From NCBI GenBank assembly GCA_002269645.1, contig NIVC01000271.1, forward strand, positions 62,001-126,000: a stretch of DNA of 64,000 nt, given 5' to 3'. This DNA is from Macrostomum lignano (taxonomy: Eukaryota). Below the pieces are notes generated by a model. That model was not told where the DNA came from. It made no database searches and worked only from the letters and a program-made list of their open reading frames with translations. The position numbers and the translations under genes were made by a program. The stretch's first letter is position 1. Each line of letters begins with the position of its first letter. Positions 6,548 through 58,906 of the stretch are shown here, in pieces.

Positions 6548-8776
6548 CAGTTAGTTAGTTAGTTAGTTAGTTAGTTATTTAGTTAGTTAGTTAGTTAGCT
6601 AGTTAGTTAGTCAGTTAGGTAGTTAGTTAGTCAGTTAGTTAGCTAGTTAGTTAGTTAGTTAGTTTTTTCCTTGAGTGTCATTGAATCCTGAGTGACATTG
6701 AGTCCCTGATTCGCATTGTGTCCTTGAGTGACACTGTTTCTTGGAGTAACGTAAACATAAAATACCCTAGGGGTATTATAATTCCCGAGTAAAACTGTTG
6801 CATAATCGCCTAACAAACAGTATGACAATAATAGATGGTACTATAAAGTCTAAAACAGGTGTAAGCCATGATGTATTTCTAATTACTTATTACCAATATC
6901 CACCAGGAACGCGGCGCCCCGCTGCACACGCCGGTCACTGGTGACAAATTCTACATGCTAACAGAGAAGCGCGCCATACCGCTGCCCCTGCTGCCCGGCA
7001 TGCCCATGCACAACCATGGCAACTATATTGTCAGGCTGGGCAATGTGGTTGCTTGGCTAGGCGAACAGGCCGAAAGCCTTGGCGTTGAAGTCTATCCGGG
7101 CGTTGCCGCGGCCGAAGTTCTGTACACAGAGGACGGTTCCGCTGTCAAAGGCGTAGCAACTAACGATGTTGGCATAGCTAAAGACGGCTCGCCTAAGGAT
7201 AGCTTCGAACGGGGCATGGAGTTCCACTGCAAACAGCTCATCATTGCCGAGGGCACGCACGGCCACTTGGCCAAGCATCTGATTAACCGGTACGATCTAA
7301 GAGCTGGACGCGAACCCCAGACCTACGGTATCGGCTTCAAAGAGCTATGGGAATTGTCCGAAGATCGCTGGCGTCCCGGATATGTTGAACACGGAGTCGG
7401 TTGGCCGCTGGACTCCGGCACATACGGTGGATATTTTATCTACCATCTGAACGAAGGCTCGCCATTGGCAGCCGTGGGTTTTGTTGTCGGCTTAGACTAC
7501 TCTAATCCCTACTTGAGTCCGTTCCACGAGTTCCAACAGTTCAAGCATCATCCGCACGTGGCCGCCGCGCTCACTGGCGGCAAGCGGATTGGCTACGGCG
7601 CCAGGGCGCTTAACGAAGGCGGAGTGCAGAGCCTGCCTAAGCTGACCTTTCCTGGCGGGTGTCTAGTCGGCTGCACCGCCGGCATGATCAATGTGCCGAA
7701 GGTGAGCTGCTGAGTCTTTGCAGAATATCCACTCACCTTGATGCTGAATATCCCCTCATCTTGATGCTAAATATCCCCTCACCTTGATGCTGAATATCCC
7801 CTCACCTTGATGCTGAATATCCCCTCACCTTGATGCTGAATATCCCCTCATCTTGATGCTAAATATCCCCTCACCTTGATGCTGAATATCCCCTCACCTT
7901 GATGCTGAATATCCCCTCACCTTGATGCTAAATATCCCCTCACCTTGATGCTAAATATCCCCTCACCTTGATGCTGAATATCCCTTCATCTTGATGCTGA
8001 TTATCCTCTCATCTTGATGCTGACTATCCCTTAAATATCTAATAATAAAGATCTTATTATAGCTGAATATCGAAGCTAATTGATCTAATTGACTTTTCAC
8101 TGTCCATACCAAAACCGCACTATAGGTAAAAGGCACCCACAACGCTATGAAGTCCGGTTCCCTAGCGGCTGAAGCTGTTCACGAAGCAATCGGTTCCGGC
8201 GAAATCGAACCCGCGACCTACGAGGAAGCGTTGCGCAACTCTTGGGTGTACAAAGAGTTGCACAGCGTCAGAAACATTCGACCAAGTTTTCACCTGCTAA
8301 ATGGTCGCCTCGGCATGTTTGGCGGTATGGCCTACACTGGCGCTGTTTGGTATTTTACTCGGGGACGCGAACCCTGGACCTTCTCGCACGGCGGTACCGA
8401 TCATGAGAAACTATTGCCAGCCAAAGATTGCAAGCCGAAAGATTATCCAAAGCCGGACAATGTCCTATCGTTTGACTTGTTGAGTAGCGTAGCTCTCACG
8501 AGTACAAATCACGATCATGACCAGCCGCCTCATCTCACTTTGTATGACGATTCCGTACCTGGCCAAGTTAACCTGTCAGTCTACGACGGCCCCGAGCAAC
8601 GGTTCTGCCCAGCTGGCGTTTACGAATACGTCGAATTAGACGACGGTTCCAAGCGATTGCAAATCAACGCGCAGAATTGCATCCACTGCAAGACATGCGA
8701 TATTAAAGATCCGACTCAGAATATTAACTGGGTTACGCCGCAGGGTGGAGAAGGACCGGCTTATAACGGAATGTGA
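5522..8776 (+). CDS. ETFDH: Electron transfer flavoprotein-ubiquinone oxidoreductase (ETF-QO), mitochondrial, 614 aa
   Basis: Exons 5522-5920, 6907-7701 and 8126-8776, both introns phase 0 GT-AG. N-terminal basic/Ala-rich transit-like peptide, FAD motif [20 protein letters not shown], 4Fe-4S motifs RFCPAGVY and CIHCKTC, C-terminus GPAYNGM. Confidence 0.97.
5991..6664. repeat. (TTAG)n microsatellite in ETFDH intron 1
   Basis: Directly visible. Confidence 0.98.
7723..8032. repeat. 23-bp minisatellite (gaatatcccctcaccttgatgct) in ETFDH intron 2
   Basis: Unit spacing of 23 bp counted directly (7741, 7764, 7787). Confidence 0.95.
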
Positions 8777-12620: not shown

Positions 12621-28938
<16,318 letters not shown>

Positions 28939-32885: not shown

Positions 32886-34345
32886 ATGGCTGCCCAGGTG
32901 CAAATTTACGACACGCTGGAGGACGCTATGGGCGCAGCGCGCGTAGACTCGCATAGTGACGTCATCAATCCTTGTCCTTACCGCGTGTACAAGCGTCGCT
33001 GGTACATTCTGGCAGTCTATTGCTTGCTTGCATTCAATCAGGGCGTGATTTGGAACACCTGGGGCCCTTTAAAAGACGCAATGCAGTCGGCTTACTCCTG
33101 GGGCAATTTCGAGTTTGGCATGCTGCCAAATTGGGCTCCCATCGGGTTTGTGATCGCGCTGGCTCCCAGCCTCATCATTGTTAATCGCTGCGGTTTGAAA
33201 GTCGCCTGTCTGTCCGGTGCCTCTCTAATGGCTGTTGGCACAGTGGCTCCGTGCTTCCTTGCCCAGTCAGCTTCCTTCACGGAAGCATTCACAATTGTTT
33301 GCCATATTGATGCCCTATTCTGCGGCCTGTCCTGCCCGGTTGCTATGGCGTTGCCACCCGCCCTATCGGCCGTATGGTTTCCACCCGGTGAACGGATTTT
33401 ATCAACATCGGTGGCTACGCTTAGTAACTATGTTGGTAGCGCGTTCTCATTCCAATTCGGCCATCTGTTTGTTAAGAATTCAACTAATACCACTGTGGAA
33501 GATATTCGACAGAGTGTAGCCCACCTGCTGTACCTGGAATGTGGATTAGCATTCTTCTCGCTGTTATTATTCGTTGCTTACTTCCCCGCTAAGCCTAAAC
33601 TGCCTAGCAGCGCCAGTGCTCAGGTTAATCGACTCAGCTTTCGAGACAGTCTCGCGCAGCTGATTGGCCGAGGCGATAACGGGGGCACTTGTTTCGCACT
33701 GTGGTCAGCCTGTCTGGCCTATTCAATTGTTGCTGGCGTTAATGGCGGATTTCTTGCCGCATTTAATTTGAACGTGGAAACCCTCGGCGCCAGTGTTGCG
33801 CAGGCGGACGCTGCCGGCTTCTGGTCGGTTCTGTCAGCTGGTTTAGTCTGCCTGCCTGTGGCATTGTTGAGCGGCCGGTTGAGGAATCGATTGAGGCCTT
33901 GTCTGTTGATTCTGCTGTTGCTGTCTGGCGTAGCCTATCTTTGCTTCAGGTGAGCGTTCTCAAGCTAGCTTAGGTGCGCGTCTGACTGTCGCGCCACGGT
34001 CGCAGATACTAAAATGACTAGATGGGTCACTCAGGCGTATATGCTTGGTAAAACAGCTTTCTACTTTCAGTTCAGTAGCAAAGAAGAATACATAAGCTAT
34101 TTTATCAAAATAAAGTCAGCTGAAATGATTTTACTCGTATAAGTTTTGAAGCCCAAGCTTTCAGGCGTCGTAAACAACTTGCTAATTGGTTCAGCAATAA
34201 TGTACATCAGCCAGTCCATTGAAATTTACATGGCAGCTTTAGACTGGAATTCCGAGTAAGGCAATAAAAATTGGGGCGGGCGGTGGGGGTAGTGTGGAAA
34301 GGCGCGGTTGAAGGGTTTAAGCTGAGGAAAGGGTCGTCTACCTAC

Positions 34346-36703: not shown

Positions 36704-42407
<5,704 letters not shown>

Positions 42408-42710
42408 CCATCAGCCTACTCCGCTCCAATGCTCAGAAAAATCTTCAGTAAACAGGATTTTGGCGTCGGGCAACTCGCAGCTTCCTTCTTCCCTCTTCAT
42501 CCATCGCCTCCCACGTAGCGCTCCCAATTTATTTTCCTGCTCGCTACCTGTAATTTTCTCCGCCTTCCTTTTTTCAACCCCGGGTTATCATCGAGTTTTT
42601 TCTGCCTCGCAGCATTCTCGGGAAGCTGGGCGAGGCGTCTCGGCTTCCCCCGTCAGGTGAAATTTATTTTGAATATAGAGGGCTCCTGCTGCCTGCTTTG
42701 CAGAGTGGCT

Positions 42711-43220
42711 GCTGGCGCCTCTGGTGCTGGCGCCTCTGGTGCTGGCGCCTCTGGTGCTGGCGCCTCTGGTGCTGGCGCCTCTGGTGCTGGCGCCTCTGGT
42801 GCTGGCGCCTCTGGTGCTGGCGCCTCTGGTGCTGGCGCCTCTGGTGCTGGCGCCTCTGGTGCTGGCGCCTCTGGTGCTGGCGCCTCTGGTGCTGGCGCCT
42901 CTGGTGCTGGCGCCTCTGGTGCTGGCGCCTCTGGTGCTGGCGCCTCTGGTGCTGGCGCCTCTGGTGCTGGCGCCTCTGGTGCTGGCGCCTCTGGTGCTGG
43001 CGCCTCTGGTGCTGGCGCCTCTGGTGCTGGCGCCTCTGGTGCTGGCGCCTCTGGTGCTGGCGCCTCTGGTGCTGGCGCCTCTGGTGCTGGCGCCTCTGGT
43101 GCTGGCGCCTCTGGTGCTGGCGCCTCTGGTGCTGGCGCCTCTGGTGCTGGCGCCTCTGGTGCTGGCGCCTCTGGTGCTGGCGCCTCTGGTGCTGGCGCCT
43201 CTGGTGCTGGCGCCTCTGGT
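42711..43220. repeat. Perfect 15-bp repeat (gctggcgcctctggt) x34
   Basis: 510 bp / 15 = 34 identical units. Confidence 0.98.
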
Positions 43221-43618
43221 GCTGAAGTTGTCTTCAATGATCGAATTCGTTCATCTGATTACTTTTCAACGCATCTGATAAACTTTCAGCACAGATAAAT
43301 TATATACGTAACAATGCGACAATGGAGTCTATTTTTAGATGTTTGCTATGCTACGAGTATATTAGAAAGGCAATATATGAAGCTGACAACCAGCTAGCTA
43401 TGAAATCTTGATCAAGGATACAGCTGTCGCTACGTTCAACAGGTTTGCCCTGCATCAAGCAGTACTGGGCCCACGCTCAGGTAGCTAAAAAGTTAATTGA
43501 CAGGTGTCGGAGATGGCCATTCAGCGAATGTTGACTGGCAATTTCCTGACTGAAACTGCACTGCAACCTGCGCACTAAACTGCATGGAGTCTGGGGCGGA
43601 TAAGAATGATGTATGGCT

Positions 43619-44047
<429 letters not shown>

Positions 44048-44504
44048 TTATGCTTTCAATCCAGCTATCTGCATCAGACTGATGTAGTTCTTCATCCGTA
44101 CTGTTTTTTATTTAGAGATTGGGAAGAGATTTCATGTCTGGCGCAGTTCTCAGCGACCCCCTCCCTGTTGCAGCAGCTATAAATTCATTAATCATTCGAT
44201 CCCTCCTCCTCTCCACCCCCCAAACCGAACTCGAGTTTTCGGAGAGCTACTCGCTTTGATCGCAGGCGCATCTGTCTGCAGCGGGAAGCCCCAGTGGTTG
44301 CAGTCTTATTTGCTCAGCCTAAAAGCGGCAATACAACAGAGGGCTGAGGCGCTGCTTATGCAATTTATAATTTAACCTAACAACCGATATTTAAAAGACT
44401 TGAACGGCATGTACCAACTATTTGGCTAGCATGAGAAGTACAATAACAGGTTAATTTTAATTGTAGCTCTTCTATGCAATGGTATAAGTGATTAATGATA
44501 AATA

Positions 44505-44830
44505 ATGAGATTTCTAATTATGAGTTAATTACCTGGATGATGGGATTTCTAGTTAACGATTAATGCTTAGATAATGGGATTTCTAATTAGGGATCAATTA
44601 ATAATATAACGGGGTCTTTAATTATGGATTATTCCATAAACAAGGAAATCTTTAATAAGGGATTAATTACCTTGTTAATGGGATCTCTAATTAGAGATTA
44701 ATCACAAGCATAATGGTATCTTTAATTAGGGATTAATCACCTGGTTAATGGGATCTCTAATTAGAGATTAATTTCCAGGATAATGGGATCTCTAATTCAA
44801 GATTAATTAGCTGTTTAATGGGATCTCTAA
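44505..44830. repeat. Degenerate ~41-bp minisatellite (taatgggatctctaattagggattaat)
   Basis: Visible imperfect units. Confidence 0.75.
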
Positions 44831-45335
44831 TATCTGGATAATAGAAGCATCTCATTCTCGTCGTTTTAAAAGCTTCTTTCTCCTCTACAGTGTTCTCAAG
44901 GCTAAATAGTAAACTATTGTATTTTGTCTTCAGCAGTAAAGGTTATTGTTAAAATTTCTCTTTACAGAAAGCTTAATAAGATTTTAAGGAAATCAGCTGC
45001 ATGAGAAAAAGAGTCCAGTTGCTTTCTCTAATTCTTGCTTGACAGGTGCAAATCTGAGTTCTAAGTCTCCAATCACCGAGTGTTTTCCCGGGAGAAATCA
45101 TAGTTGAAGCTGCAACTGACTCCTCCTCTCGCTCGTCATCAGGGATTGGCGGCTTAGGCTATCTCGCCTCTTTGTTGTACCTCCCGGTACTGCCCTGCAG
45201 CAGAGCCGGGTAAGTCAGGACTGCTCCTCTTTCTTGCTCACTTGCTTCATCTCTCCATGATCTGGTTTATCTTTTGTTGTATCCTTCTTGATACATTCCT
45301 TTTTTCTTCTTTATCCGTCCCTATTCTCTCTTGAT

Positions 45336-46160
45336 CTATCCCTCTGTCTCTTGATCTATCCCTTTTCCCTCTTGATCTATCCCTTTTCCCTCTTGATCTA
45401 TCCCTTTTCCCTCTTGATCTATCCCTTTTCCCTCTTGATCTATCCCTTTTCCCTCTTGATCTATCCCTTTTCCCTCTTGATCTATCCCTTTTCCCTCTTG
45501 ATCTATCCCTTTTCCCTCTTGATCTATCCCTTTTCCCTCTTGATCTATCCCTTTTCCCTCTTGATCTATCCCTTTTCCCTCTTGATCTATCCCTTTTCCC
45601 TCTTGATCTATCCCTTTTCCCTCTTGATCTATCCCTTTTCCCTCTTGATCTATCCCTTTTCCCTCTTGATCTATCCCTTTTCCCTCTTGATCTATCCCTT
45701 TTCCCTCTTGATCTATCCCTTTTCCCTCTTGATCTATCCCTTTTCCCTCTTGATCTATCCCTTTTCCCTCTTGATCTATCCCTTTTCCCTCTTGATCTAT
45801 CCCTTTTCCCTCTTGATCTATCCCTTTTCCCTCTTGATCTATCCCTTTTCCCTCTTGATCTATCCCTTTTCCCTCTTGATCTATCCCTTTTCCCTCTTGA
45901 TCTATCCCTTTTCCCTCTTGATCTATCCCTTTTCCCTCTTGATCTATCCCTCTGTCTCTCTTGATCTATACCTCTGTCTCTTGATCTATACCTCTGTCTC
46001 TTGATCTATCCCTCTGTCTCTCTTGATCTATCCCTCTGTCTCTCTTGATCTATCCCTCTGTCTCTCTTGATCTATCCCTCTGTCTCTCTTGATCTATCCC
46101 TCTGTCTCTCTTGATCTATCCCTCTGTCTCTCTTGATCTATCCCTCTGTCTCTCTTGATC
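45336..46160. repeat. 21-bp minisatellite (ctcttgatctatcccttttcc) grading into 20/22-bp variants
   Basis: Directly visible. Confidence 0.97.
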
Positions 46161-46344
46161 TGAAGCTGAAGCTGAAGCTGAATCTGAAGCTGTGTTTGCT
46201 GAAGCTCAGTTTCTGCATCAAAGTCTCTCTCCCTATGGATCTTTGCAGCAGCCAATGGTGAGCAGGGCCTTTCTTGGCGAGCGGCTTTCTGAGACTGGTT
46301 GAGAGAGAGAGAAATGATTTGTCCAGTCAAAGAAGCTGCCGCGA

Positions 46345-46357
46345 TGACGCTTATAAG
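46345..46357 (+). promoter_or_regulatory. Candidate core promoter of the neuropeptide gene: CRE half-site TGACG plus TATAAG
   Basis: TGACG at 46345-46349 and TATAAG at 46352-46357, about 100 bp upstream of the ATG at 46454. Confidence 0.5.
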
Positions 46358-46453
46358 AGGCTGGCCCAGCTGCCGTTGAAGAAGTTCCTCCACTCCTTGT
46401 AGTGCGCGCAGCCACAGTTAAAAATCACCAATTGACTAAACAAACAGGACAAA

Positions 46454-47512
46454 ATGGTAAGTTGCTCAAGTTTCATCTCTTCTCACAGAAAAAAAGTTCC
46501 GCTTTTAAGCTCTGCTGTTCCCTTGCTTGAGTTGGATAAGTTTAATCTCAGAAGAAAGTAACAACAGAATGCCTATTTGAGCGGCTGCATGATGACTCTA
46601 AAAACATATAAGATTTAGAGCTGAAGCACGACGGCAGCCTCCAAGCTTGAAGGAATTTGAAATCAGAGTTTCCTAGAAAGCGAAAGAGGCGACGGCAGCC
46701 TCCAAGCTTGAAGGAATTTAAAATCAGAGTTTCCTAGAAAGTGAAAGAGGCACGCACGGAGATTTGATTCCCAACTCTTAATTTTTTCTTCTTTTAACTA
46801 ATTTCGGCAATAGCTGTTCTGCGCATGCGCGGTTGAGGCTCTGTTAGAAAGTTAATGCTCGAGACGTGATGGAGTACGGCTGGACCATGCCCCAGCGGCG
46901 CCACTTTTGCTAATAGAAATCTAAAGAGGAAAATGAGCAGGAATTGGCTAAGCAAGTTGAATTTCCTTTGCAGAGCAGGATGGCTCTTTTTTACTTTTTG
47001 TTCGCCCTTGGGTTGCCGGAATTTCTACTAATTGTCAATTTTGTGAAAAGGAAGCAGGCTTAGGAGCGAATAGCAACTTGCTGATTTCTAAAGAGATCGA
47101 AATTCTCCTTTTTCTACAGGTTCGAAATCACGAAGCCACCCTGCTGGCGCTGATCCTTGCCGTCGCCTGCGCAACCTGCGCTCTAGCTGCTCCGCACAGC
47201 AGCTCCATCGATATTGACGAAGATGATGTCGTCGAAAAACGCGCTTACGGAGTCGTACCGTGGGGCAAACGCGCTTACGGAGTCGTACCGTGGGGCAAAC
47301 GCGCTTACGGAGTCGTACCGTGGGGCAAACGCGCTTACGGAGTCGTACCGTGGGGCAAACGCGCTTACGGAGTCGTACCGTGGGGCAAACGCGCTTACGG
47401 AGTCGTACCGTGGGGCAAACGCGCTTACGGAGCCGTACCGTGGGGCAAACGCGCTTACGGAGTCGTACCGTGGGGCAAGCGCGCTTACGGAGTCGTTCCG
47501 TGGGGACGGTAA
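46454..47512 (+). CDS. Neuropeptide precursor, 131 aa: 8x AYGVVPW-amide + 1x AYGAVPW-amide
   Basis: ATG-only coding exon 46454-46456 (caaaATG|gtaagt) spliced phase 0 to 47120-47512 (tttctacag|). Hydrophobic signal peptide, acidic spacer, then nine 30-bp units encoding AYGVVPWG-KR (Gly amide donor plus dibasic cleavage site; the last unit ends WG-R-stop). Confidence 0.93.
46629..46750. repeat. 61-bp tandem duplication in the neuropeptide intron
   Basis: cgacggcagcctccaagcttgaagg..gaaagagg present twice. Confidence 0.9.
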
Positions 47513-49275
47513 AGGACGGATGGATGACTTACCAACAAGAATCGTGCGAAGATCAGGTGGCTCTACAGTCATCGTTAAAAATTGCATGCCCAGCAACTTG
47601 AAATAATAATACCTATATGAATGAAAACTTCCTGTAGTCAGCATGCCGACAGAAGCAAGGCAGAGCAACTGATATTAGGCGCTCGATTCTCTGACATAGC
47701 CGAAACTTATTTTCCAATAACTCGATCTGTGTTGCAAACTATAAAGTAATGTCAGGATTCCACATCTGTAAGTCCCTCGTTTGCTTCTGCAGTTGCATCA
47801 AGTCCCGAGCAAAATTATAAATAAAAACGACGATGCTAAGATGGAAATGGAAATGGCGCAAAATTCAATTGACAATTCAGTCTTCTGTTTGATATCAAAA
47901 TTGGAATGTAATGAACACAACACAAGGACGCTTTCATGTCTTGGGGGTTGGTCCTCATGGGTTGTTATCCCATTTGCTGCTCGTGCACCTACGTAGCTTT
48001 GACTTGCCTGTTGTCATCGAGAACTACAAGGAAGAGCTCATGTGAACGTCCAGCAGCATTCAATATTCAATGCTGATTTCGCTCTCTATAGGCATCTGTT
48101 CGGCCCCGGATGTCAGCAGCCCAGCTGCAACTGCGGTTTTCTCTGAACGATCGATGCCTAAGCCCCATGTTTTGCGCATGCAACAGCTTCAAGCAAGGGA
48201 TTTACCAAGCCCCAGTCGCTAAGGACATTGAAGTTCGCATCCTAACCTATAGCAGCATATATGAACGGAAAAGTTCGATTAAAGCTATCCGTAGTCAAAG
48301 TCCATTTCTTAGTCGTTTGATTCTATCGCGCTGTGTCTTTTGCTTCTCCTGATTGGAAATTAGAGAAGAAGCTGCATAGCAGGCACTAATTGACAGGGAC
48401 AGTCTTTCAAAGGTAAAAAAGATAAGCAATGCTTTTTAAAGCAGATTCGCTTGATTTTGGCTCCCATTAGTGAGCCGTGATCGTGACAGATCTAAGGAAT
48501 TGAGGTTATGTTTCTTTCTCATCAAATCATCTGTTTTTGTAAAGATATGTTTCCAATTTTGAAAACTTCAATCACGAAATTTTGCCAGCAATAAAAAACG
48601 CAAAGAAAAATGCAATTTCAAGATACGCGAAGGAGTCATCAAGTGCACCACGGATGCAACACCGCTAGGCTGTGCGAGTTTCTCTTCCCCACAGTGTGCA
48701 CACAAAAACAACTCGATCCTGTCAACTTCTCCCATCAACTTTTTTCTCCACTGCCGCACCCCAATCCTCAGACCCAACTACCATGATATGATTAATTGTG
48801 GAGTGCTTGACTCCGTGCGAGCTCCTCCAGCCTCTCCCATATTATAGGACCTTACCCCCTCGTCAGTCTGTTGTGCCTAAATATGCTTTATTTATTAGAT
48901 TGATCCGGCAGGGCCGGCACTCAAGAAATCGCGCATTGACTCAATTCATAGTCACACACGCACACACACACACACGCTTTTTCCTTCATCTTTTATCTCA
49001 TTTTTGCTGCTGGGACCCTCGCGACCTCATCGGGCGACGCTCTTATTCACTTTCTTGGCAACCGTGCAAGGGGCCACTTCTGACGCTAAGAAGGCTAAAG
49101 GGCCAGTGGAGGCACTTCACAAGTTTATTAAAAGTCTTAGTTGGCTGACTGACCGGCTGGCTGGGTTTTGTCGAACCACCATCAGAGGTGGGACTGTTTT
49201 GTCAACTAAAATTATAAAATTATTTCTACGGCTGATCCATCCTTCTCGAAACTCTGAGCTAGACTTTCCAAATCC

Positions 49276-49430
49276 TGTAGGTTCCCGTAGGTTCCCGTAG
49301 GTTCCCGTAGGTTCCCGTAGGTTCCCGTAGGTTCCCGTAGGTTCCCGTAGGTTCCCGTAGGTTCCCGTAGGTTCCCGTAGGTTCCCGTAGGTTCCCGTAG
49401 GTTCCCGTAGGTTCCCGTAGGTTCCCCTAG
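49276..49430. repeat. 10-bp repeat (gtaggttccc)n
   Basis: Directly visible. Confidence 0.97.
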
Positions 49431-49959
49431 GCCTTAACGCCTAGTGATCTTTGTCATGACTAGCTGCTAAAGTGGAAGTGAAACGGTAGCAAACATTTTG
49501 AGCTCTTTGTAGTTCTTCCCTTGTGCTCTGGCCCATTCTTCCTGTGATCTGTGGCTGTGACTGAGTGACCTGAGTGACTGTCCTAACTGGTTGCTGGCCA
49601 ATGATGCCAATCCCGTGATTTTGCTCCCTACTTTGAGCAAGTAAACAATTATTAATAAATAGTAGAGCAGCCGGGGCGCCAGCTTTCAGACGCTATGCAG
49701 AGAAAGAGAAAATGAGATGAGATCAAACTGGTATCAGAATTCGGAATCTGTCAAGTCGTGCACAGCTGCGAGGCATCATAGTGCCGATTGGGGGTAAATA
49801 TTGACAGTAAGCCGCTTAGCAGCTCTTATTTGAATACGTATAGGTGCTACGGAAAAAAGCTATATAAATATATAGTCAGTTTTTTATTGTAGAATATTAA
49901 TAATAAAAAATTTCTTAAATTATGGATTAGGCAGATCGAGTCCACACCGCAAACACCGA

Positions 49960-50215
49960 GGGCTGAGTGTCGTGGCTGAGTGTCTGAGTGTGACCGAGTG
50001 GACGTGGCTGAGTGTCTGGATGTGGCTGAGTGTCATGGCTGGGTGTCTGAGTATGGCTGAGTGTCGTAGGTGGCTGAGTGCCTGAGAGTGGCTGAGTGTC
50101 TGAGTGTGGCTGAGCGTCGTAGGTGGCTGAGTGCCTGAGAGTGGCTGAGTGTCTGAGTATGGCTGAGTGTCGTAGGTGGCTGAGTGCCTGAGAGTGGCTG
50201 AGTGTCGTGGCGTGT
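49960..50215. repeat. gtggctgagtgtc-type minisatellite
   Basis: Directly visible. Confidence 0.9.
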
Positions 50216-51298
50216 CGTCAAAAACGCCCCAGCTACAGTTCAATGTGCATATGTGCTCACAGAAATCATGCTCCTTTATTTATACTGCTATAGCTGGTCT
50301 AATAAGAAATTTTTTACCTATATTGTACGCTTGATCATCAATGAACATATGCATGAACGTATTCTAATTTGTATTTATTTTTTTGCATTTATTTGTATCT
50401 AAATCACCTGTTTCTACATGATTTCTAGCCCAGTCAAGTCGGTTTTTTAGTTTGGGGGTTATCTTAACTCCAGATAAGAATAACGCGTTTTATAATAATT
50501 CTAAAAAGAAAGTGAAAAAATTAAAAGTAAAAGTTCAAGTCCTTGAAAAGCAATGGACCCTCATTGTATTCCAGAGTCTGTGGAGAGCCAGAATACTTGA
50601 GAAACACTCAAACGGTTCCGCGTAGTTTACAAACCTCTATAAATGGCCAAGTTTACTTGTGAATGCGTTGACCAGCTTTTATTGCGACTTAATTAAAATA
50701 AGTCTGGGCTGCCCAAACAAGAAGCTAAAAGTATGCGAAATCTGCCATGGTATGACTATTATATACAACTAGTATAAAAATGTAATTTAGTCTATCTTGT
50801 GAAGTACTGTTATACGAAGACTTTGTCAATTGTTTCCTGCATGAAGTCTTTGTCCCAGCTAGCTTGGATTGGGAGAGAACAGAGACTTCCCTGTGCTAAG
50901 ATTGAGTGTTTTTGGATAAACGGGGGAGAGTTCACGCGATGACTCATCACAAGCTTTTCCGCGCTCTGAGTGTGTACTTCTGCATAGAGGGAATAAGCAT
51001 GACTCATCACCTGTTTCTATTTTTAGCGCGGAAAAAAGTCATGTGACTTTGCGATTAAACACACCCTATTAGGCATGTGACCTCGACGATCTGGCTCAGT
51101 TGGACACATTGAAAAATTGACGACGTTCTCGATAAAGATCCTCTACATAAGTTCGTAGCACAGAAGAACAGAAGCCGAAAAGTTTGATCAGGTGACCTGT
51201 CCAAGATCATTAGCTTTGACCTAATCTACGAGTAAGCTTTCGACTTTTTGACCTGTTCAATATAGTCTATGGCATCTTGATGAAAACTGCGTTCTTAC

Positions 51299-56540: not shown

Positions 56541-57265
56541 ACATAGCATCTCAGCAACTCCCCACTTGAGCCATGGCATCTCAGCAGCTCCCCACTTGAG
56601 CCATGGCATCTCAGCAACTCCCCACTTGAGCCATGGCATCTCAGCAACTCCCCACTTGAGCCATGGCATCTCAGAAACTCCTCACTTGAGCCATGGCATC
56701 TCAGAAGCTCCCCACTTGAGCCATGGCATCTCAGCAACTCCCCACTTGAGCCATGGCATCTCAGCAACTCCCCACTTGAGCCATGGCATCTCAGCAACTC
56801 CCCACTTGAGCATTAGCATCTCAGCAACTCCCCACTTGAGCCATGGCATCTCAGCAACTCCCCACTGGAGCATTAGCATCTCAGAAACTCCCCACTTGAG
56901 CATTAGCATCTCAGCAACTCCCCACTTGAGCCATGGCATCTCAGCAACTCCCCACTTGAGCCATGGCATCTCAGCAACTCCCCACTTGAGCCATGGCATC
57001 TCAGCAACTCCCCACTTGTCCCATGGCATCTCAGCAACTCCCCACTTGAGCATTAGCATCTCAGCAAATCCCCACTTGAGCCATGGCATCTCAGCAACTC
57101 CCCACTTGAGCCATGGCATCTCAGCAACTCCCCACTTGAGCATTAGCATCTCAGCAAATCCCCACTTGAGCCATGGCATCTCAGCAACTCCCCACTTGAG
57201 CCATGGCATCTCAGCAACTCCCCACTTGAGCCATGGCATCTCAGCAACTCCCCACTTGAGCCTTG
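56541..57265. repeat. 30-bp minisatellite (gcatctcagcaactccccacttgagccatg)
   Basis: Directly visible. Confidence 0.96.
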
Positions 57266-58906
57266 GTATATCCAACACTCACTACAGTCCTCTAAATTGC
57301 CCAGAGCTAGCTGATAAATTTTATTCCATGGTTTTATTCCCAATTTAAATGAGAGGCATTGAAAGCTCCTACATTGAGTGCCGGAATAATTGATTCCGCT
57401 TTGGAAGAGGCAACGCATTAAAATAAAAAAATGAAGCCAAAAATTTTAAATTCTTTCGTGCCGTCTGGGTTTAAAAATATTACGAAATTATAATAGATGC
57501 TAGGGCATCATGTGAGGCGACTGGGACGCTACAGGGACTCCGGCAGGGACTAAATGAAATATGGACTGGAGGCCTTAATAGCCTGCGCTGAATCATAAAA
57601 TTATAACAAACGTCAAAGCTTGATCAGGACGCGTCAATCGCTAAAACAAATGGGGGTCGTGGAGTCGTAGGGTTGGGGGTGGGAAGGCAGCAAGAGAAAA
57701 TGCGTGGGTAGGTGGGTTAACACAGGCCTCGTATTGCCATAGCAACCGCCAGCTTCACGCTGCATCGTACGTCAATGCAGGTCGGATAGATGTACAGCTA
57801 CTCAATTTTTTCTTAATACTGGCTGTACAACACACGTCTGTTATGGCAACAAAGGAGGTGGCTTGCCAATGGAAAAATTATTATAAAAGCAGGTGCGCAA
57901 AGCAGCTACGAGTAAAACAATCCGTTTGCAAAAAAATTCAAAACTATCTTGCTCTGATCAAACACAAGCACAATGACCAAAGTCGAAGTGCAGGCTAAGC
58001 TATCGATTATCGTTCTGGCTCTGCGGATTCCAGGTAGGGTCCTTAAGAACCATAAATACTGGTATTATTAAAAAACTCGATCTAGCCTACGAGTATCAGG
58101 GGCAGAGCAGCTCAGCGTCTGACTCTTGCGCTGCGACTTGGGGTTGCCGTGCGATTCACAGCCATGAATGCCGAACTCCAAGGCACAGGGAGTGTACATG
58201 TCTGACGATTAGACGGTCAGGGCCCGCTGTACATCCTGTGAGAGTGTGTGCATGAGTGTGTGCCGTACGTTACAATATTGGCGCACATGTACATGCTCAG
58301 CGGTCAGCGGAATGTGCAGAATTGGCATCGGCGACCGAATTTCAAAATTTACTACCATCGATTTTCAGGCGCAACGCTGGAAACCTACAGCCTGATCACC
58401 GGCTACTTGTGCATCACGGCCGACTTCACGGAGACGGTTCCTAACTTGGTGACTCGAAATCCCACTACCGGATGCGCCTTGGCTTGTGATGACAACGCTC
58501 GCTGTCAGGCCTTCAGCCTGGCTGACGGTCCGTGCCAGCTGTTCGTGTTCGACAGGTGCAGCAATTCGGTGAGGGACTGCGGCTGCTCCAGGAGAGGCCG
58601 GGTGTTTGTGAAGCAGCAGCCGGGACTCGAGGCGGGCGCGCTGTGTCCATCTGGCTACGGAGACGACCTGTGCGGAGTGAAGTACAAGGTGCACAACGTT
58701 GTCTCCCCAGCCTACATGACTTGGAACCAAGGAAAAGAGAAATGCGAGACGGATGGCGGCCTGGCGATGATGTCGGACGTGACCAGTGAGGCTGAGAAGC
58801 TGCACATGCTGCAGCTGTACAACACGTACATGGCCGGCATAGGAGACATGCTCCTTGGCGGAGTTCAGGCGCCTGGCAGTGTGGAACCGGCCGGAGGCTG
58901 GAGCTG

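What the first reader, a model, noticed from the sequence alone, without database searches (positions are those of the whole stretch)
46454..47512. Neuropeptide precursor producing nine copies of a PW-amide heptapeptide (AYGVVPWa)
Seen: ATG-only first coding exon, signal peptide of about 24 aa, acidic spacer, and nine G-K/R-flanked peptides (eight AYGVVPW, one AYGAVPW). The units are nearly identical even at synonymous sites. Established: G-KR marks prohormone convertase cleavage and PAM amidation. The single Gly after Trp predicts PW-amide, not the kinin-type WG-amide. Inference: a Wamide-type or flatworm PWamide signalling peptide that I do not recognise as described; its receptor is unknown.
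Basis: partly seen in the sequence, partly recalled or inferred. Interest (0 to 1): 0.75.

Follow-up and report, generated by a model that had tools for sequence, protein, structure and literature searches.

The report
Flatworm PW-amide neuropeptide precursor gene
This is a real two-exon gene of the free-living flatworm Macrostomum lignano whose product should be cut into nine copies of a small amidated signalling peptide (AYGVVPW-amide); it is a new, unnamed member of an already known flatworm peptide family, not a new kind of signal.

Summary
ATG at 46454-46456 is followed by a GTAAGT donor and a 663-nt intron. Exon 2 (47120-47512) encodes a signal peptide, an acidic spacer and nine G-K/R-flanked heptapeptides: eight AYGVVPW and one AYGAVPW.

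The window is Macrostomum lignano contig NIVC01000271.1. GenBank already carries a gene model with this splice and this 131-aa product. I did not see its product name; the two related M. lignano genes are labelled hypothetical protein. That annotation is built from RNA-seq.

A diverged paralogue encodes 20 copies of AYGSMPW. Between the two genes, five of the eight conserved codons per unit differ synonymously and none differs non-synonymously. That rules out a chance ORF in a satellite.

The closest described family is the flatworm npp-5 PWamide family. Schistosoma AAYMDLPWa and AAYIDLPWa, seen by mass spectrometry, share the pattern A-Y-x-x-aliphatic-P-W-amide. The sister peptide AYGSMPWa was already synthesised as a Macrostomum Wamide (JBC 2022) and gave no current at three DEG/ENaC channels.

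AYGVVPWa itself appears in no searchable paper. Amidation, neural expression, receptor and function are untested.

The parts
46352..46359 (+). TATA-like box (TATAAGAG), about 100 nt upstream of the ATG; putative core promoter
   Evidence: Read directly from the sequence. Its function is inferred and was not tested.
46454..46456 (+). Coding part of exon 1: the ATG start codon only, followed by the donor GTAAGT
   Evidence: The GenBank model's coding range begins at this exact base (gene 3001-4059 of L001, which equals window 46454-47512).
46457..47119 (+). Intron, 663 nt, GT...AG with a polypyrimidine tract; contains a 61-bp x2 tandem repeat at 46629-46751
   Evidence: The length follows from a 1059-nt gene span minus 396 coding nt.
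47120..47188 (+). Exon 2 start: residues 2-24 of the predicted signal peptide (VRNHEATLLALILAVACATCALA), with predicted cleavage after A-L-A
   Evidence: Hydropathy profile and the -3/-1 rule. The region aligns with the signal peptides of the paralogues.
47189..47236 (+). Acidic spacer APHSSSIDIDEDDVVE (6 acidic residues of 16)
   Evidence: A similar acidic spacer is present in both M. lignano paralogues.
47237..47509 (+). KR site followed by nine 30-nt units, each encoding AYG(V/A)VPW + Gly + KR (final unit Gly + Arg): 8x AYGVVPW and 1x AYGAVPW (unit 7, 47423-47452)
   Evidence: TRF and the unit table.
47510..47512 (+). Stop codon TAA immediately after the last unit
47820..47825 (+). First AATAAA downstream of the stop; likely polyadenylation signal, giving a 3'UTR of about 320 nt
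   Evidence: Pattern scan. This is an inference only.

Best explanation
The region is a protein-coding gene of Macrostomum lignano for a secreted multi-copy peptide precursor (preprohormone).

Proposed processing:
1. The signal peptide is removed after Ala24.
2. Prohormone convertase (PC2 type) cuts after each Lys-Arg.
3. A carboxypeptidase trims the basic residues.
4. Peptidylglycine alpha-amidating monooxygenase converts the exposed Gly to a C-terminal amide.

One precursor then yields eight AYGVVPW-NH2 ([M+H]+ 790.42), one AYGAVPW-NH2 (762.39) and an acidic spacer peptide.

The gene belongs to a small M. lignano Wamide gene family. The other known members encode AYGSMPWa and xGVFRWa peptides. 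It is most likely the Macrostomum counterpart of the flatworm npp-5 PWamide precursors. The peptide probably acts as a neuropeptide on a still unknown receptor, most likely a GPCR.

Shown: the gene structure, the coding constraint, the paralogy, and a transcript-derived gene model.

Inferred: the cleavage and amidation steps, neuronal expression, the receptor class, and orthology with npp-5.
For: 1. The exact spliced 131-aa product is an annotated gene on NCBI GCA_002269645.1 contig NIVC01000271.1. Locus L001 is identical to window 43454-50512. NIVC01 is the Mlig_3_7 assembly, whose GenBank annotation was made only from RNA-seq and transcriptome assemblies.

2. An exhaustive HMMER search of 1.84 billion representatives found a clear PWamide relative, P0128 from M. 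lignano (E 5.9e-27), with the same layout of signal peptide, acidic spacer and AYGSMPWGKR units ending in GR-stop. The same list also held a more distant Macrostomum relative, P0184 (point 4). Of the 15 best-150 hits whose sequences I read, the others were unrelated period-10 repeats or other animals' multi-copy peptide precursors.

3. Comparing the modal units of the two genes, five of the eight conserved codons differ synonymously and none non-synonymously. Both amino-acid changes sit at peptide positions 4-5. This indicates purifying selection on A-Y-G-x-x-P-W-G-K-R.

4. A third M. lignano precursor, P0184 (xSGVFRWGKR units), is 41% identical, including the N-terminal region.

5. Schistosome npp-5 precursors carry KR-AAYMDLPWG-KR...KR-AAYIDLPWG at the C-terminal end. 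Those peptides were detected amidated by LC-MS/MS. Planarian npp-5 gives PNWKDMPWa and SAWRDMPWa. The shared pattern is Ala at -7, Tyr/Trp at -6, an aliphatic residue at -3, then Pro-Trp-amide. BLASTP gives 25 bits, pairwise E 8e-5. hhalign gives probability 60%, E 8.7e-5.

6. A PC2 homologue is expressed in the M. lignano nervous system and is essential.

7. Dandamudi et al. 2022 treated AYGSMPWa as a product of a Macrostomum Wamide propeptide.
Against: - There is no direct evidence here for the mature amidated peptide, for neuronal expression or for any receptor.
- Similarity to npp-5 is confined to about 8-10 residues per unit, and part of it is the generic G-K-R processing site. The Asp at -4 found in the schistosome and planarian npp-5 peptides listed is absent. 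The profile-profile probability is only 60%.
- The sister peptide AYGSMPWa evoked no current at three M. lignano DEG/ENaC channels, so no receptor is known for the family.
- The first word-index protein search found nothing at all, and Pfam has no family above its cut-off.
Confidence: 0.8

Rival explanations
1. The 30-bp array is just one more of this genome's many non-coding tandem repeats, and it happens to have an open reading frame with Gly-Lys-Arg in each unit.
For: The window contains about 40 tandem arrays, and tandem and simple repeats make up about 15% of the genome. Arrays with a period that is a multiple of 3 are often open in one or more frames. The 21-bp satellite just upstream (45282-46161) reads RDRSRGK x28 on the minus strand, so it also shows a GKR motif by chance.
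Against: - The frame continues upstream into a canonical signal peptide and an acidic spacer, and it stops right after the last unit.
- A nucleotide-diverged paralogue keeps the peptide, with five synonymous and no non-synonymous changes in the eight conserved codons.
- A transcript-derived gene model gives exactly this product.
- The GKR-bearing open frame over the satellite begins and ends inside the array at its upstream end, with no start codon or signal peptide ahead of the repeats.
Confidence: 0.02
2. It is a real secreted multi-copy peptide precursor, but the peptides are not neuronal signals. They would be released by gland or epidermal cells, for example as a pheromone, an antimicrobial or defensive peptide, or a component of a secretion.
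For: Nothing in the data shows where the gene is expressed. Multi-copy amidated peptides can also come from exocrine glands in other animals (general knowledge). No receptor responded to the sister peptide.
Against: - The peptide is a short, uncharged, amidated heptapeptide with the same C-terminus as flatworm npp-5.
- The schistosome npp-5 gene is a marker of a neuron sub-cluster and is expressed in the brain of the miracidium.
- A polyclad ...DPWamide antibody labels larval brain cells.
- The peptide lacks the cationic amphipathic character typical of antimicrobial peptides.
Confidence: 0.1
3. The family is the flatworm version of bilaterian myoinhibitory peptide (MIP, allatostatin-B, Wamide) and not a flatworm-specific npp-5 lineage. 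Alternatively, npp-5 is itself a derived MIP. Either way the peptide would act through an MIP/sex-peptide-receptor-type GPCR.
For: - The C-terminus is W-amide and the precursor is multi-copy.
- Macrostomum paralogues encode ...FRWamide peptides.
- One Macrostomum propeptide is reported to carry both GRTNNKNVFRWa and AYGSMPWa, and the authors treated it as the Wamide propeptide.
- Sequence clustering placed platyhelminth sequences in the Wamide cluster.
- A polyclad has a precursor that its authors annotated as MIP.
Against: - The peptide has no N-terminal Trp and no W(X6)W spacing, and it is only seven residues long.
- A large transcriptome survey reported that Wamides (ASTB) are absent from platyhelminths.
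- No receptor data exist.
- This reading partly overlaps with the best explanation and does not exclude it.
Confidence: 0.3

Closest known systems
Macrostomum lignano AYGSMPWamide precursor (BOX15_Mlig029361g1/g2, PAA46830.1/PAA69966.1); peptide cited from propeptide Mlig032062.g1 in Dandamudi et al. 2022, PMC9234716
   Same: Same species and same layout: signal peptide, acidic spacer, and 10-residue units A-Y-G-x-x-P-W-G-K-R ending in G-R-stop. It is 61% identical over 82 residues, including the N-terminus.
   Different: - Residues 4-5 are Ser-Met where the window gene has Val-Val.
- The genome holds 20 copies against 9.
- It is a single coding exon with an 11-residue longer N-terminus and no intron after the ATG.
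- The cited propeptide Mlig032062.g1 is said to contain an ...FRWamide peptide as well.
Flatworm npp-5 (PWamide) precursors: Schistosoma mansoni Sm-npp-5 (Smp_052880/Smp_340860; AAYMDLPWa, AAYIDLPWa) and Schmidtea mediterranea npp-5 (PNWKDMPWa, SAWRDMPWa)
   Same: - Same phylum.
- Same C-terminal Pro-Trp-amide.
- Ala at -7, Tyr/Trp at -6 and an aliphatic residue at -3.
- KR-flanked peptides at the C-terminal end of a small secreted precursor, with the last peptide at the very C-terminus.
   Different: - The peptides are seven residues, not eight.
- Gly-Val or Gly-Ser replaces x-Asp at positions -5/-4.
- There are nine tandem copies against two.
- No similarity is detectable outside the peptide units, and hhalign probability is only 60%.
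Macrostomum lignano FRWamide precursor (BOX15_Mlig026077g1/g2, P0184)
   Same: It has 10-residue units x-x-G-V-x-x-W-G-K-R, a similar signal peptide and an acidic spacer, and it is 41% identical.
   Different: The peptides end in Phe-Arg-Trp-amide, not Val-Pro-Trp-amide. The intron lies after the signal peptide and not after the ATG.
Myoinhibitory peptide / allatostatin-B / Wamide superfamily (annelids, molluscs, arthropods, nematodes)
   Same: The peptides are amidated at a C-terminal Trp and come from multi-copy precursors of short peptides.
   Different: The defining second Trp (W(X6)W) is missing. No receptor link is known. The literature disagrees on whether flatworms have MIPs at all.
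Insect and other kinins (FxxWG-amide) and APGWamide / planarian cpp-1 (xPGWamide)
   Same: All carry a Trp near an amidated C-terminus.
   Different: Kinins need Trp-Gly-Gly before the basic site, and here there is a single Gly. APGWamides have Pro-Gly-Trp, and here the order is Val-Pro-Trp.

Membership tests
Neuropeptide/peptide-hormone preprohormone (general) | N-terminal signal peptide | tested here: met
   There is a hydrophobic core at residues 7-24 (Kyte-Doolittle maximum 3.26) with A-L-A at -3/-1. No dedicated signal-peptide predictor was available.
Neuropeptide/peptide-hormone preprohormone (general) | Repeated peptides flanked by dibasic convertase sites, with Gly as amide donor | tested here: met
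   The array has KR before unit 1, G-K-R after units 1-8 and G-R-stop after unit 9.
Neuropeptide/peptide-hormone preprohormone (general) | The gene is transcribed and spliced as predicted | tested here: met
   This is indirect evidence. The exact spliced product is a gene model on GCA_002269645.1, whose annotation derives solely from RNA-seq and transcriptome data. I did not see the reads themselves.
Neuropeptide/peptide-hormone preprohormone (general) | Purifying selection on the peptide sequence | tested here: met
   Window unit against paralogue unit: five synonymous and no non-synonymous differences in eight conserved codons.
Neuropeptide/peptide-hormone preprohormone (general) | Mature amidated peptide present in tissue; expression in neurons or endocrine cells | not testable with these tools
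   This needs LC-MS/MS and in situ hybridisation.
Flatworm npp-5 (PWamide) family | C-terminal Pro-Trp-Gly followed by a basic site or the precursor end, giving PW-amide | tested here: met
   compared.
Flatworm npp-5 (PWamide) family | Aromatic residue (Tyr/Trp) six residues from the C-terminus, often preceded by Ala, and an aliphatic residue (L/M) before Pro | tested here: met
   AYGVVPW against AAYMDLPW, AAYIDLPW and SAWRDMPW: Ala at -7, Tyr/Trp at -6, Val/Leu/Met at -3.
Flatworm npp-5 (PWamide) family | Asp at -4 (D-[LM]-P-W), found in the schistosome and planarian members listed | tested here: not met
   The window peptide has Val at -4 and the paralogue has Ser. The polyclad peptide GVWSNDPWa also departs from this pattern, so the feature may not be universal.
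Flatworm npp-5 (PWamide) family | Precursor-level homology beyond the peptide motif | tested here: inconclusive
   BLASTP aligns only the peptide units (25 bits). hhalign gives probability 60% over 22 columns. The defining paper (McVeigh 2009) was not available.
MIP / allatostatin-B / Wamide superfamily | C-terminal Trp-amide on a multi-copy precursor | tested here: met
MIP / allatostatin-B / Wamide superfamily | Second conserved Trp near the N-terminus (W(X6)W) | tested here: not met
   The heptapeptide has a single Trp, and Tyr sits at position 2.
MIP / allatostatin-B / Wamide superfamily | Activates an MIP/SPR-type GPCR or a Wamide-gated DEG/ENaC channel | not tested
   Literature only: the sister peptide AYGSMPWa gave no response at three M. 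lignano DEG/ENaC channels in oocytes.
Kinin (FxxWG-amide) | Trp-Gly-Gly before the basic site, so that Gly-amide is the C-terminus | tested here: not met
   Every unit has a single Gly after Trp.

The most novel reading that the evidence does not exclude
The Macrostomum PWamide and FRWamide genes form one family, and a single propeptide is reported to carry both peptide types. They may be the missing link showing that the supposedly flatworm-specific npp-5 PWamides are derived orthologues of bilaterian myoinhibitory peptides (Wamides). That would settle the contradictory reports on whether Platyhelminthes have MIP signalling. It would also predict an MIP/SPR-type GPCR as the receptor, in parasitic flatworms too.
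Probability: 0.3. Interest if true: 0.5.

Novelty: new member of a known kind. Interest (0 to 1): 0.3.

Why it matters
The finding gives a functional label to an unnamed gene model in a transgenic, RNAi-tractable flatworm laboratory model.

It adds an early-branching (macrostomorph) member to the PWamide family. That family is otherwise known from planarians, polyclads and schistosomes.

In schistosomes the related peptide changes larval behaviour and is discussed as a control target, but its receptor is unknown. A free-living model with a high-copy precursor could make finding that receptor easier.

The finding also bears on whether flatworm PWamides descend from the ancient Wamide/MIP system.

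A practical by-product concerns the GenBank annotation. Its models for two sister genes of this family undercount peptide copies because short-read transcript assemblies collapse the repeats.

Tried and rejected
- **Word-index protein search with the whole precursor:** no hit. It was uninformative, probably because repeats are handled poorly, since the exhaustive HMMER search later found relatives.
- **The exhaustive search's 578 hits at E<=0.001:** of the 15 best-150 hits whose sequences I read, most were unrelated period-10 repeats or other animals' multi-copy precursors, such as SEFLGKR-type units and the Trichoplax ...D[VI]PWN precursor. Only P0128 and P0184, both M. lignano, were accepted as relatives.
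- **Organism from ETF-QO similarity:** the best match was only 72% identical, to assorted animals, so it was uninformative. An exact-product look-up identified the organism.
- **Pfam:** nothing above cut-off. The sub-threshold ATX_III (sea-anemone toxin) matches cover 8-9 residues of the repeat and were rejected as chance.
- **Literature string searches:** AYGVVPW and its sub-strings returned 0 papers. A broad search for VPWG/VPWa returned only noise.
- **Papers not reachable:** McVeigh 2009 (the npp-5 definition) and McVeigh 2012 are not held. Wasik 2015 is not held. The paper cap then stopped a look at Grudniewska 2016. So I could not check whether a Macrostomum npp-5 was already listed from ESTs, nor confirm the spliced-leader sequence.
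- **Supplement of the JBC 2022 paper:** it does not hold the Mlig032062.g1 sequence as text.
- **Cnidarian GLWamide, ctenophore NPWamide and Hydra PWamide:** considered and set aside once the organism was known.
- **My first tandem-array control:** it picks the frame with the largest overlap, which for the target array is not the coding frame. It shows only that open frames are common, and the specific contrast rests.

Full report
**1. The observation**

- ATG at 46454-46456 is followed directly by the donor GTAAGT.
- A pyrimidine-rich acceptor (ttctcctttttctacag|GTTCGA) puts the start of exon 2 at 47120, so the intron is 46457-47119, 663 nt.
- The stop-free stretch upstream of exon 2 (46961-47119) has no in-frame ATG, so the start codon must come from elsewhere.
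- The spliced ORF encodes 131 residues: MVRNHEATLLALILAVACATCALA / APHSSSIDIDEDDVVE / KR / six AYGVVPWGKR / AYGAVPWGKR / AYGVVPWGKR / AYGVVPWGR / stop (TAA, 47510-47512).
- The N-terminus has a hydrophobic core and A-L-A at -3/-1, which fits a 24-residue signal peptide.
- TRF reports the array at 47237-47505 as period 30, 9.0 copies, 98% matches.
- Six units are identical at all 30 bases. The other three differ by single substitutions, plus the changed linker in the last unit.

**2. Is it more than chance?**

A tandem repeat with an open frame is not remarkable in this window. There are about 40 arrays. Those whose period is a multiple of three are often open in one or more frames. The 21-bp satellite immediately upstream even reads RDRSRGK x28 on the minus strand.

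Four things set this array apart.

- The frame runs upstream into a signal peptide and an acidic spacer, and it stops right after the last unit.
- A second gene in the same genome has the same layout but a diverged nucleotide sequence.
- Between the modal units of the two genes (GCT TAC GGA GTC GTA CCG TGG GGC AAA CGC against GCC TAC GGA AGC ATG CCA TGG GGA AAG CGA), five of the eight conserved codons differ synonymously and none non-synonymously. The two amino-acid changes sit at peptide positions 4-5. This is the signature of selection on A-Y-G-x-x-P-W-G-K-R.
- A transcript-derived gene model matches the predicted product exactly (section 3).

The high identity within each array, set against the divergence between arrays, points to recent expansion or homogenisation by unequal exchange. 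That is an inference.

**3. Source and existing annotation**

An exact-sequence look-up found the 131-aa spliced product as a called gene on NCBI assembly GCA_002269645.1, contig NIVC01000271.1. The gene span is 1059 bp.

The fetched locus is identical to window 43454-50512, so the window is NIVC01000271.1:62001-126000. NIVC01000000 is the Mlig_3_7 assembly of the flatworm Macrostomum lignano, line DV1. Its GenBank annotation was produced only from RNA-seq and transcriptome assemblies.

The relatives carry BOX15_Mlig locus tags and the organism name. I did not see the reads. The look-up tool withholds the names of the window's own products, so I did not see this gene's label. The two related genes are both named "hypothetical protein".

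**4. Relatives**

The word-index search with the precursor found nothing. The exhaustive HMMER search gave 578 hits at E<=0.001. I read 15 of the best 150; most were unrelated period-10 repeats or other animals' multi-copy peptide precursors. Two are genuine relatives, and both are from M. lignano.

- **P0128 (BOX15_Mlig029361g1/g2).** It is 61% identical, including the N-terminus, and encodes AYGSMPWGKR units. The genomic ORF at that locus is a single 246-codon exon with 20 units. The GenBank product has only 5.
- **P0184 (BOX15_Mlig026077g1/g2).** It is 41% identical and encodes GTTFRW, QSGVFRW and PSGVFRW units of the same 10-residue period. The genome has 8 units against 6 in the product.

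Macrostomum therefore has a small family of Wamide precursor genes, and the window gene is one of them.

**5. Comparison with what is described**

*Literature on flatworm PWamides.*
- Collins et al. 2010 list the npp-5 peptides: AAYMDLPWa and AAYIDLPWa for Schistosoma mansoni and S. japonicum, and PNWKDMPWa and SAWRDMPWa for Schmidtea.
- Wang et al. 2016 describe the 111-aa S. mansoni "PWamide" precursor.
- The schistosome npp-5 gene marks a neuron sub-cluster and is expressed in the miracidium brain.
- Both schistosome peptides were detected by LC-MS/MS, and AAYMDLPW-NH2 altered cercarial behaviour at high concentration.
- A polyclad has GVWSNDPWa in larval brain cells.

*Sequence comparison.* A search seeded with these published peptides retrieved the schistosome precursors. 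They have a signal peptide, a long spacer, and then KR-AAYMDLPWG-KR-ALA-KR-AAYIDLPWG at the C-terminus.

The Macrostomum peptide shares Ala at -7, Tyr at -6, an aliphatic residue at -3 and Pro-Trp-amide. It lacks the Asp at -4 and is one residue shorter. BLASTP gives 25 bits (pairwise E 8e-5). Profile-profile comparison gives probability 60% over 22 columns.

I read this as probable but unproven membership of the npp-5 family.

**6. The sister peptide is already in the literature**

[quoted passage not shown] They found no response at three M. lignano DEG/ENaC channels expressed in oocytes.

AYGVVPW itself, and its sub-strings, occur in no paper of the searchable library. I could not read McVeigh et al. 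2009, which defined npp-5 and used Macrostomum ESTs. I therefore cannot exclude that a Macrostomum npp-5 was listed there.

**7. How it most likely works**

1. The precursor is translocated co-translationally and its signal peptide is removed.
2. A PC2-type convertase cleaves after each Lys-Arg. A PC2 homologue is expressed in the M. lignano nervous system and is essential.
3. A carboxypeptidase removes the basic residues.
4. Amidation consumes the Gly.

The products would be eight AYGVVPW-NH2, one AYGAVPW-NH2 and the spacer peptide (masses). These steps are inferred from the standard processing pathway and were not shown here.

The receptor is unknown. A GPCR is the default expectation. The negative DEG/ENaC result concerns the sister peptide and only three channels.

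**8. Wamide/MIP question**

The literature disagrees on whether flatworms have MIP/Wamides, and a polyclad precursor has been annotated as MIP.

The Macrostomum family combines PWamide and FRWamide peptides, reportedly even within one propeptide. That makes a link between npp-5 and MIP plausible. The defining W(X6)W motif is absent, however, and no receptor data exist.

**9. A detail on the ATG-only exon**

From memory only, flatworm spliced leaders, including that of M. lignano, end in AUG. If so, trans-splicing onto the acceptor at 47120 would give the same protein as the cis-spliced model.

Three features favour cis-splicing, but I could not examine reads:
- the TATA-like box about 100 nt upstream of the ATG;
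- the consensus donor directly after the ATG;
- the GenBank model itself.

The paralogue has no such intron. Its ATG directly follows an acceptor-like ttttcttag.

**10. Verdict**

The gene is a new, unnamed member of a known kind: the flatworm PWamide/Wamide precursors. It is not a new type of signal.

Interest is modest. It lies in the early-branching position of Macrostomum, in how well this laboratory model suits receptor hunting, and in the possible bridge between npp-5 and MIP.

Noticed in passing
L002:4001-4741 (NIVC01004687.1, M. lignano): The paralogue's genomic ORF is one uninterrupted exon of 246 codons with 20 AYGSMPWG units. The GenBank product (PAA46830.1/PAA69966.1, 96 aa) has only 5. 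The model removes 15 units as a false intron, probably because the repeats collapsed in the short-read transcript assembly.
   Followed up: yes
L003/L004:3001-3560 (NIVC01004577.1, NIVC01001908.1): A third M. lignano Wamide gene (BOX15_Mlig026077g1/g2) encodes GTTFRWa, QSGVFRWa and PSGVFRWa. It has a real intron after the signal peptide. The genome holds 8 units but the GenBank product only 6, so this model is also collapsed. It is 41% identical to the window precursor.
   Followed up: partly
window 45282-46192: A 21-bp satellite (41.6 copies) and a (CTGAAG)n run lie directly upstream of the gene's putative promoter. On the minus strand the satellite reads RDRSRGK x28. This would be a false positive for any scan that looks for repeated Gly-Lys-Arg motifs.
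   Followed up: partly
window 1-64000: The window is unusually rich in tandem repeats. There are about 40 arrays, including a 23-bp unit x172 (16839-20786), a 32-bp unit x61 (40091-42001), a perfect 15-bp unit x34 (42710-43224) and long TTAG/TAAC/TCTA/CAGT microsatellites. Another period-30 array at 56542-57266 is open-framed but has no peptide-precursor features.
   Followed up: partly
window 24708-28412 (-): There is an intact 1234-codon ORF of a non-LTR retrotransposon with apurinic-type endonuclease, reverse transcriptase and RNase H domains (Pfam E 2e-34, 3e-20, 2e-12).
   Followed up: no
window 6955-7713 and 8147-8776 (+): These are two large exons of the mitochondrial electron-transfer flavoprotein-ubiquinone oxidoreductase gene. 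The best match is 72% identical, to other animals. The GT-AG intron between them holds a 23-bp tandem repeat (7719-8030).
   Followed up: partly
window 32886-33953 (+): An ORF matches the major facilitator superfamily (Pfam MFS_1, E 4e-12). It is flanked by TCTA microsatellites.
   Followed up: no
window 46629-46751: A 61-bp unit is repeated twice (96% identity) inside the intron of the PWamide gene. No function is suggested.
   Followed up: no
P0224 (Trichoplax adhaerens B3S6C3 / XP_002115879.1): A placozoan secreted precursor with seven ...D[VI]PWN-KR units surfaced among the HMMER hits. It shares a D-x-P-W core with flatworm npp-5 peptides but has Asn where an amide-donor Gly would be. This is probably convergence.
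   Followed up: no
P0272 residues 77-86 (S. mansoni Sm-npp-5): The profile comparison aligned the segment YFNSMYLP-KR, which lies just before the first schistosome PWamide, with a Macrostomum peptide unit. It may be a decayed third copy. The evidence is weak (hhalign probability 60%).
   Followed up: no
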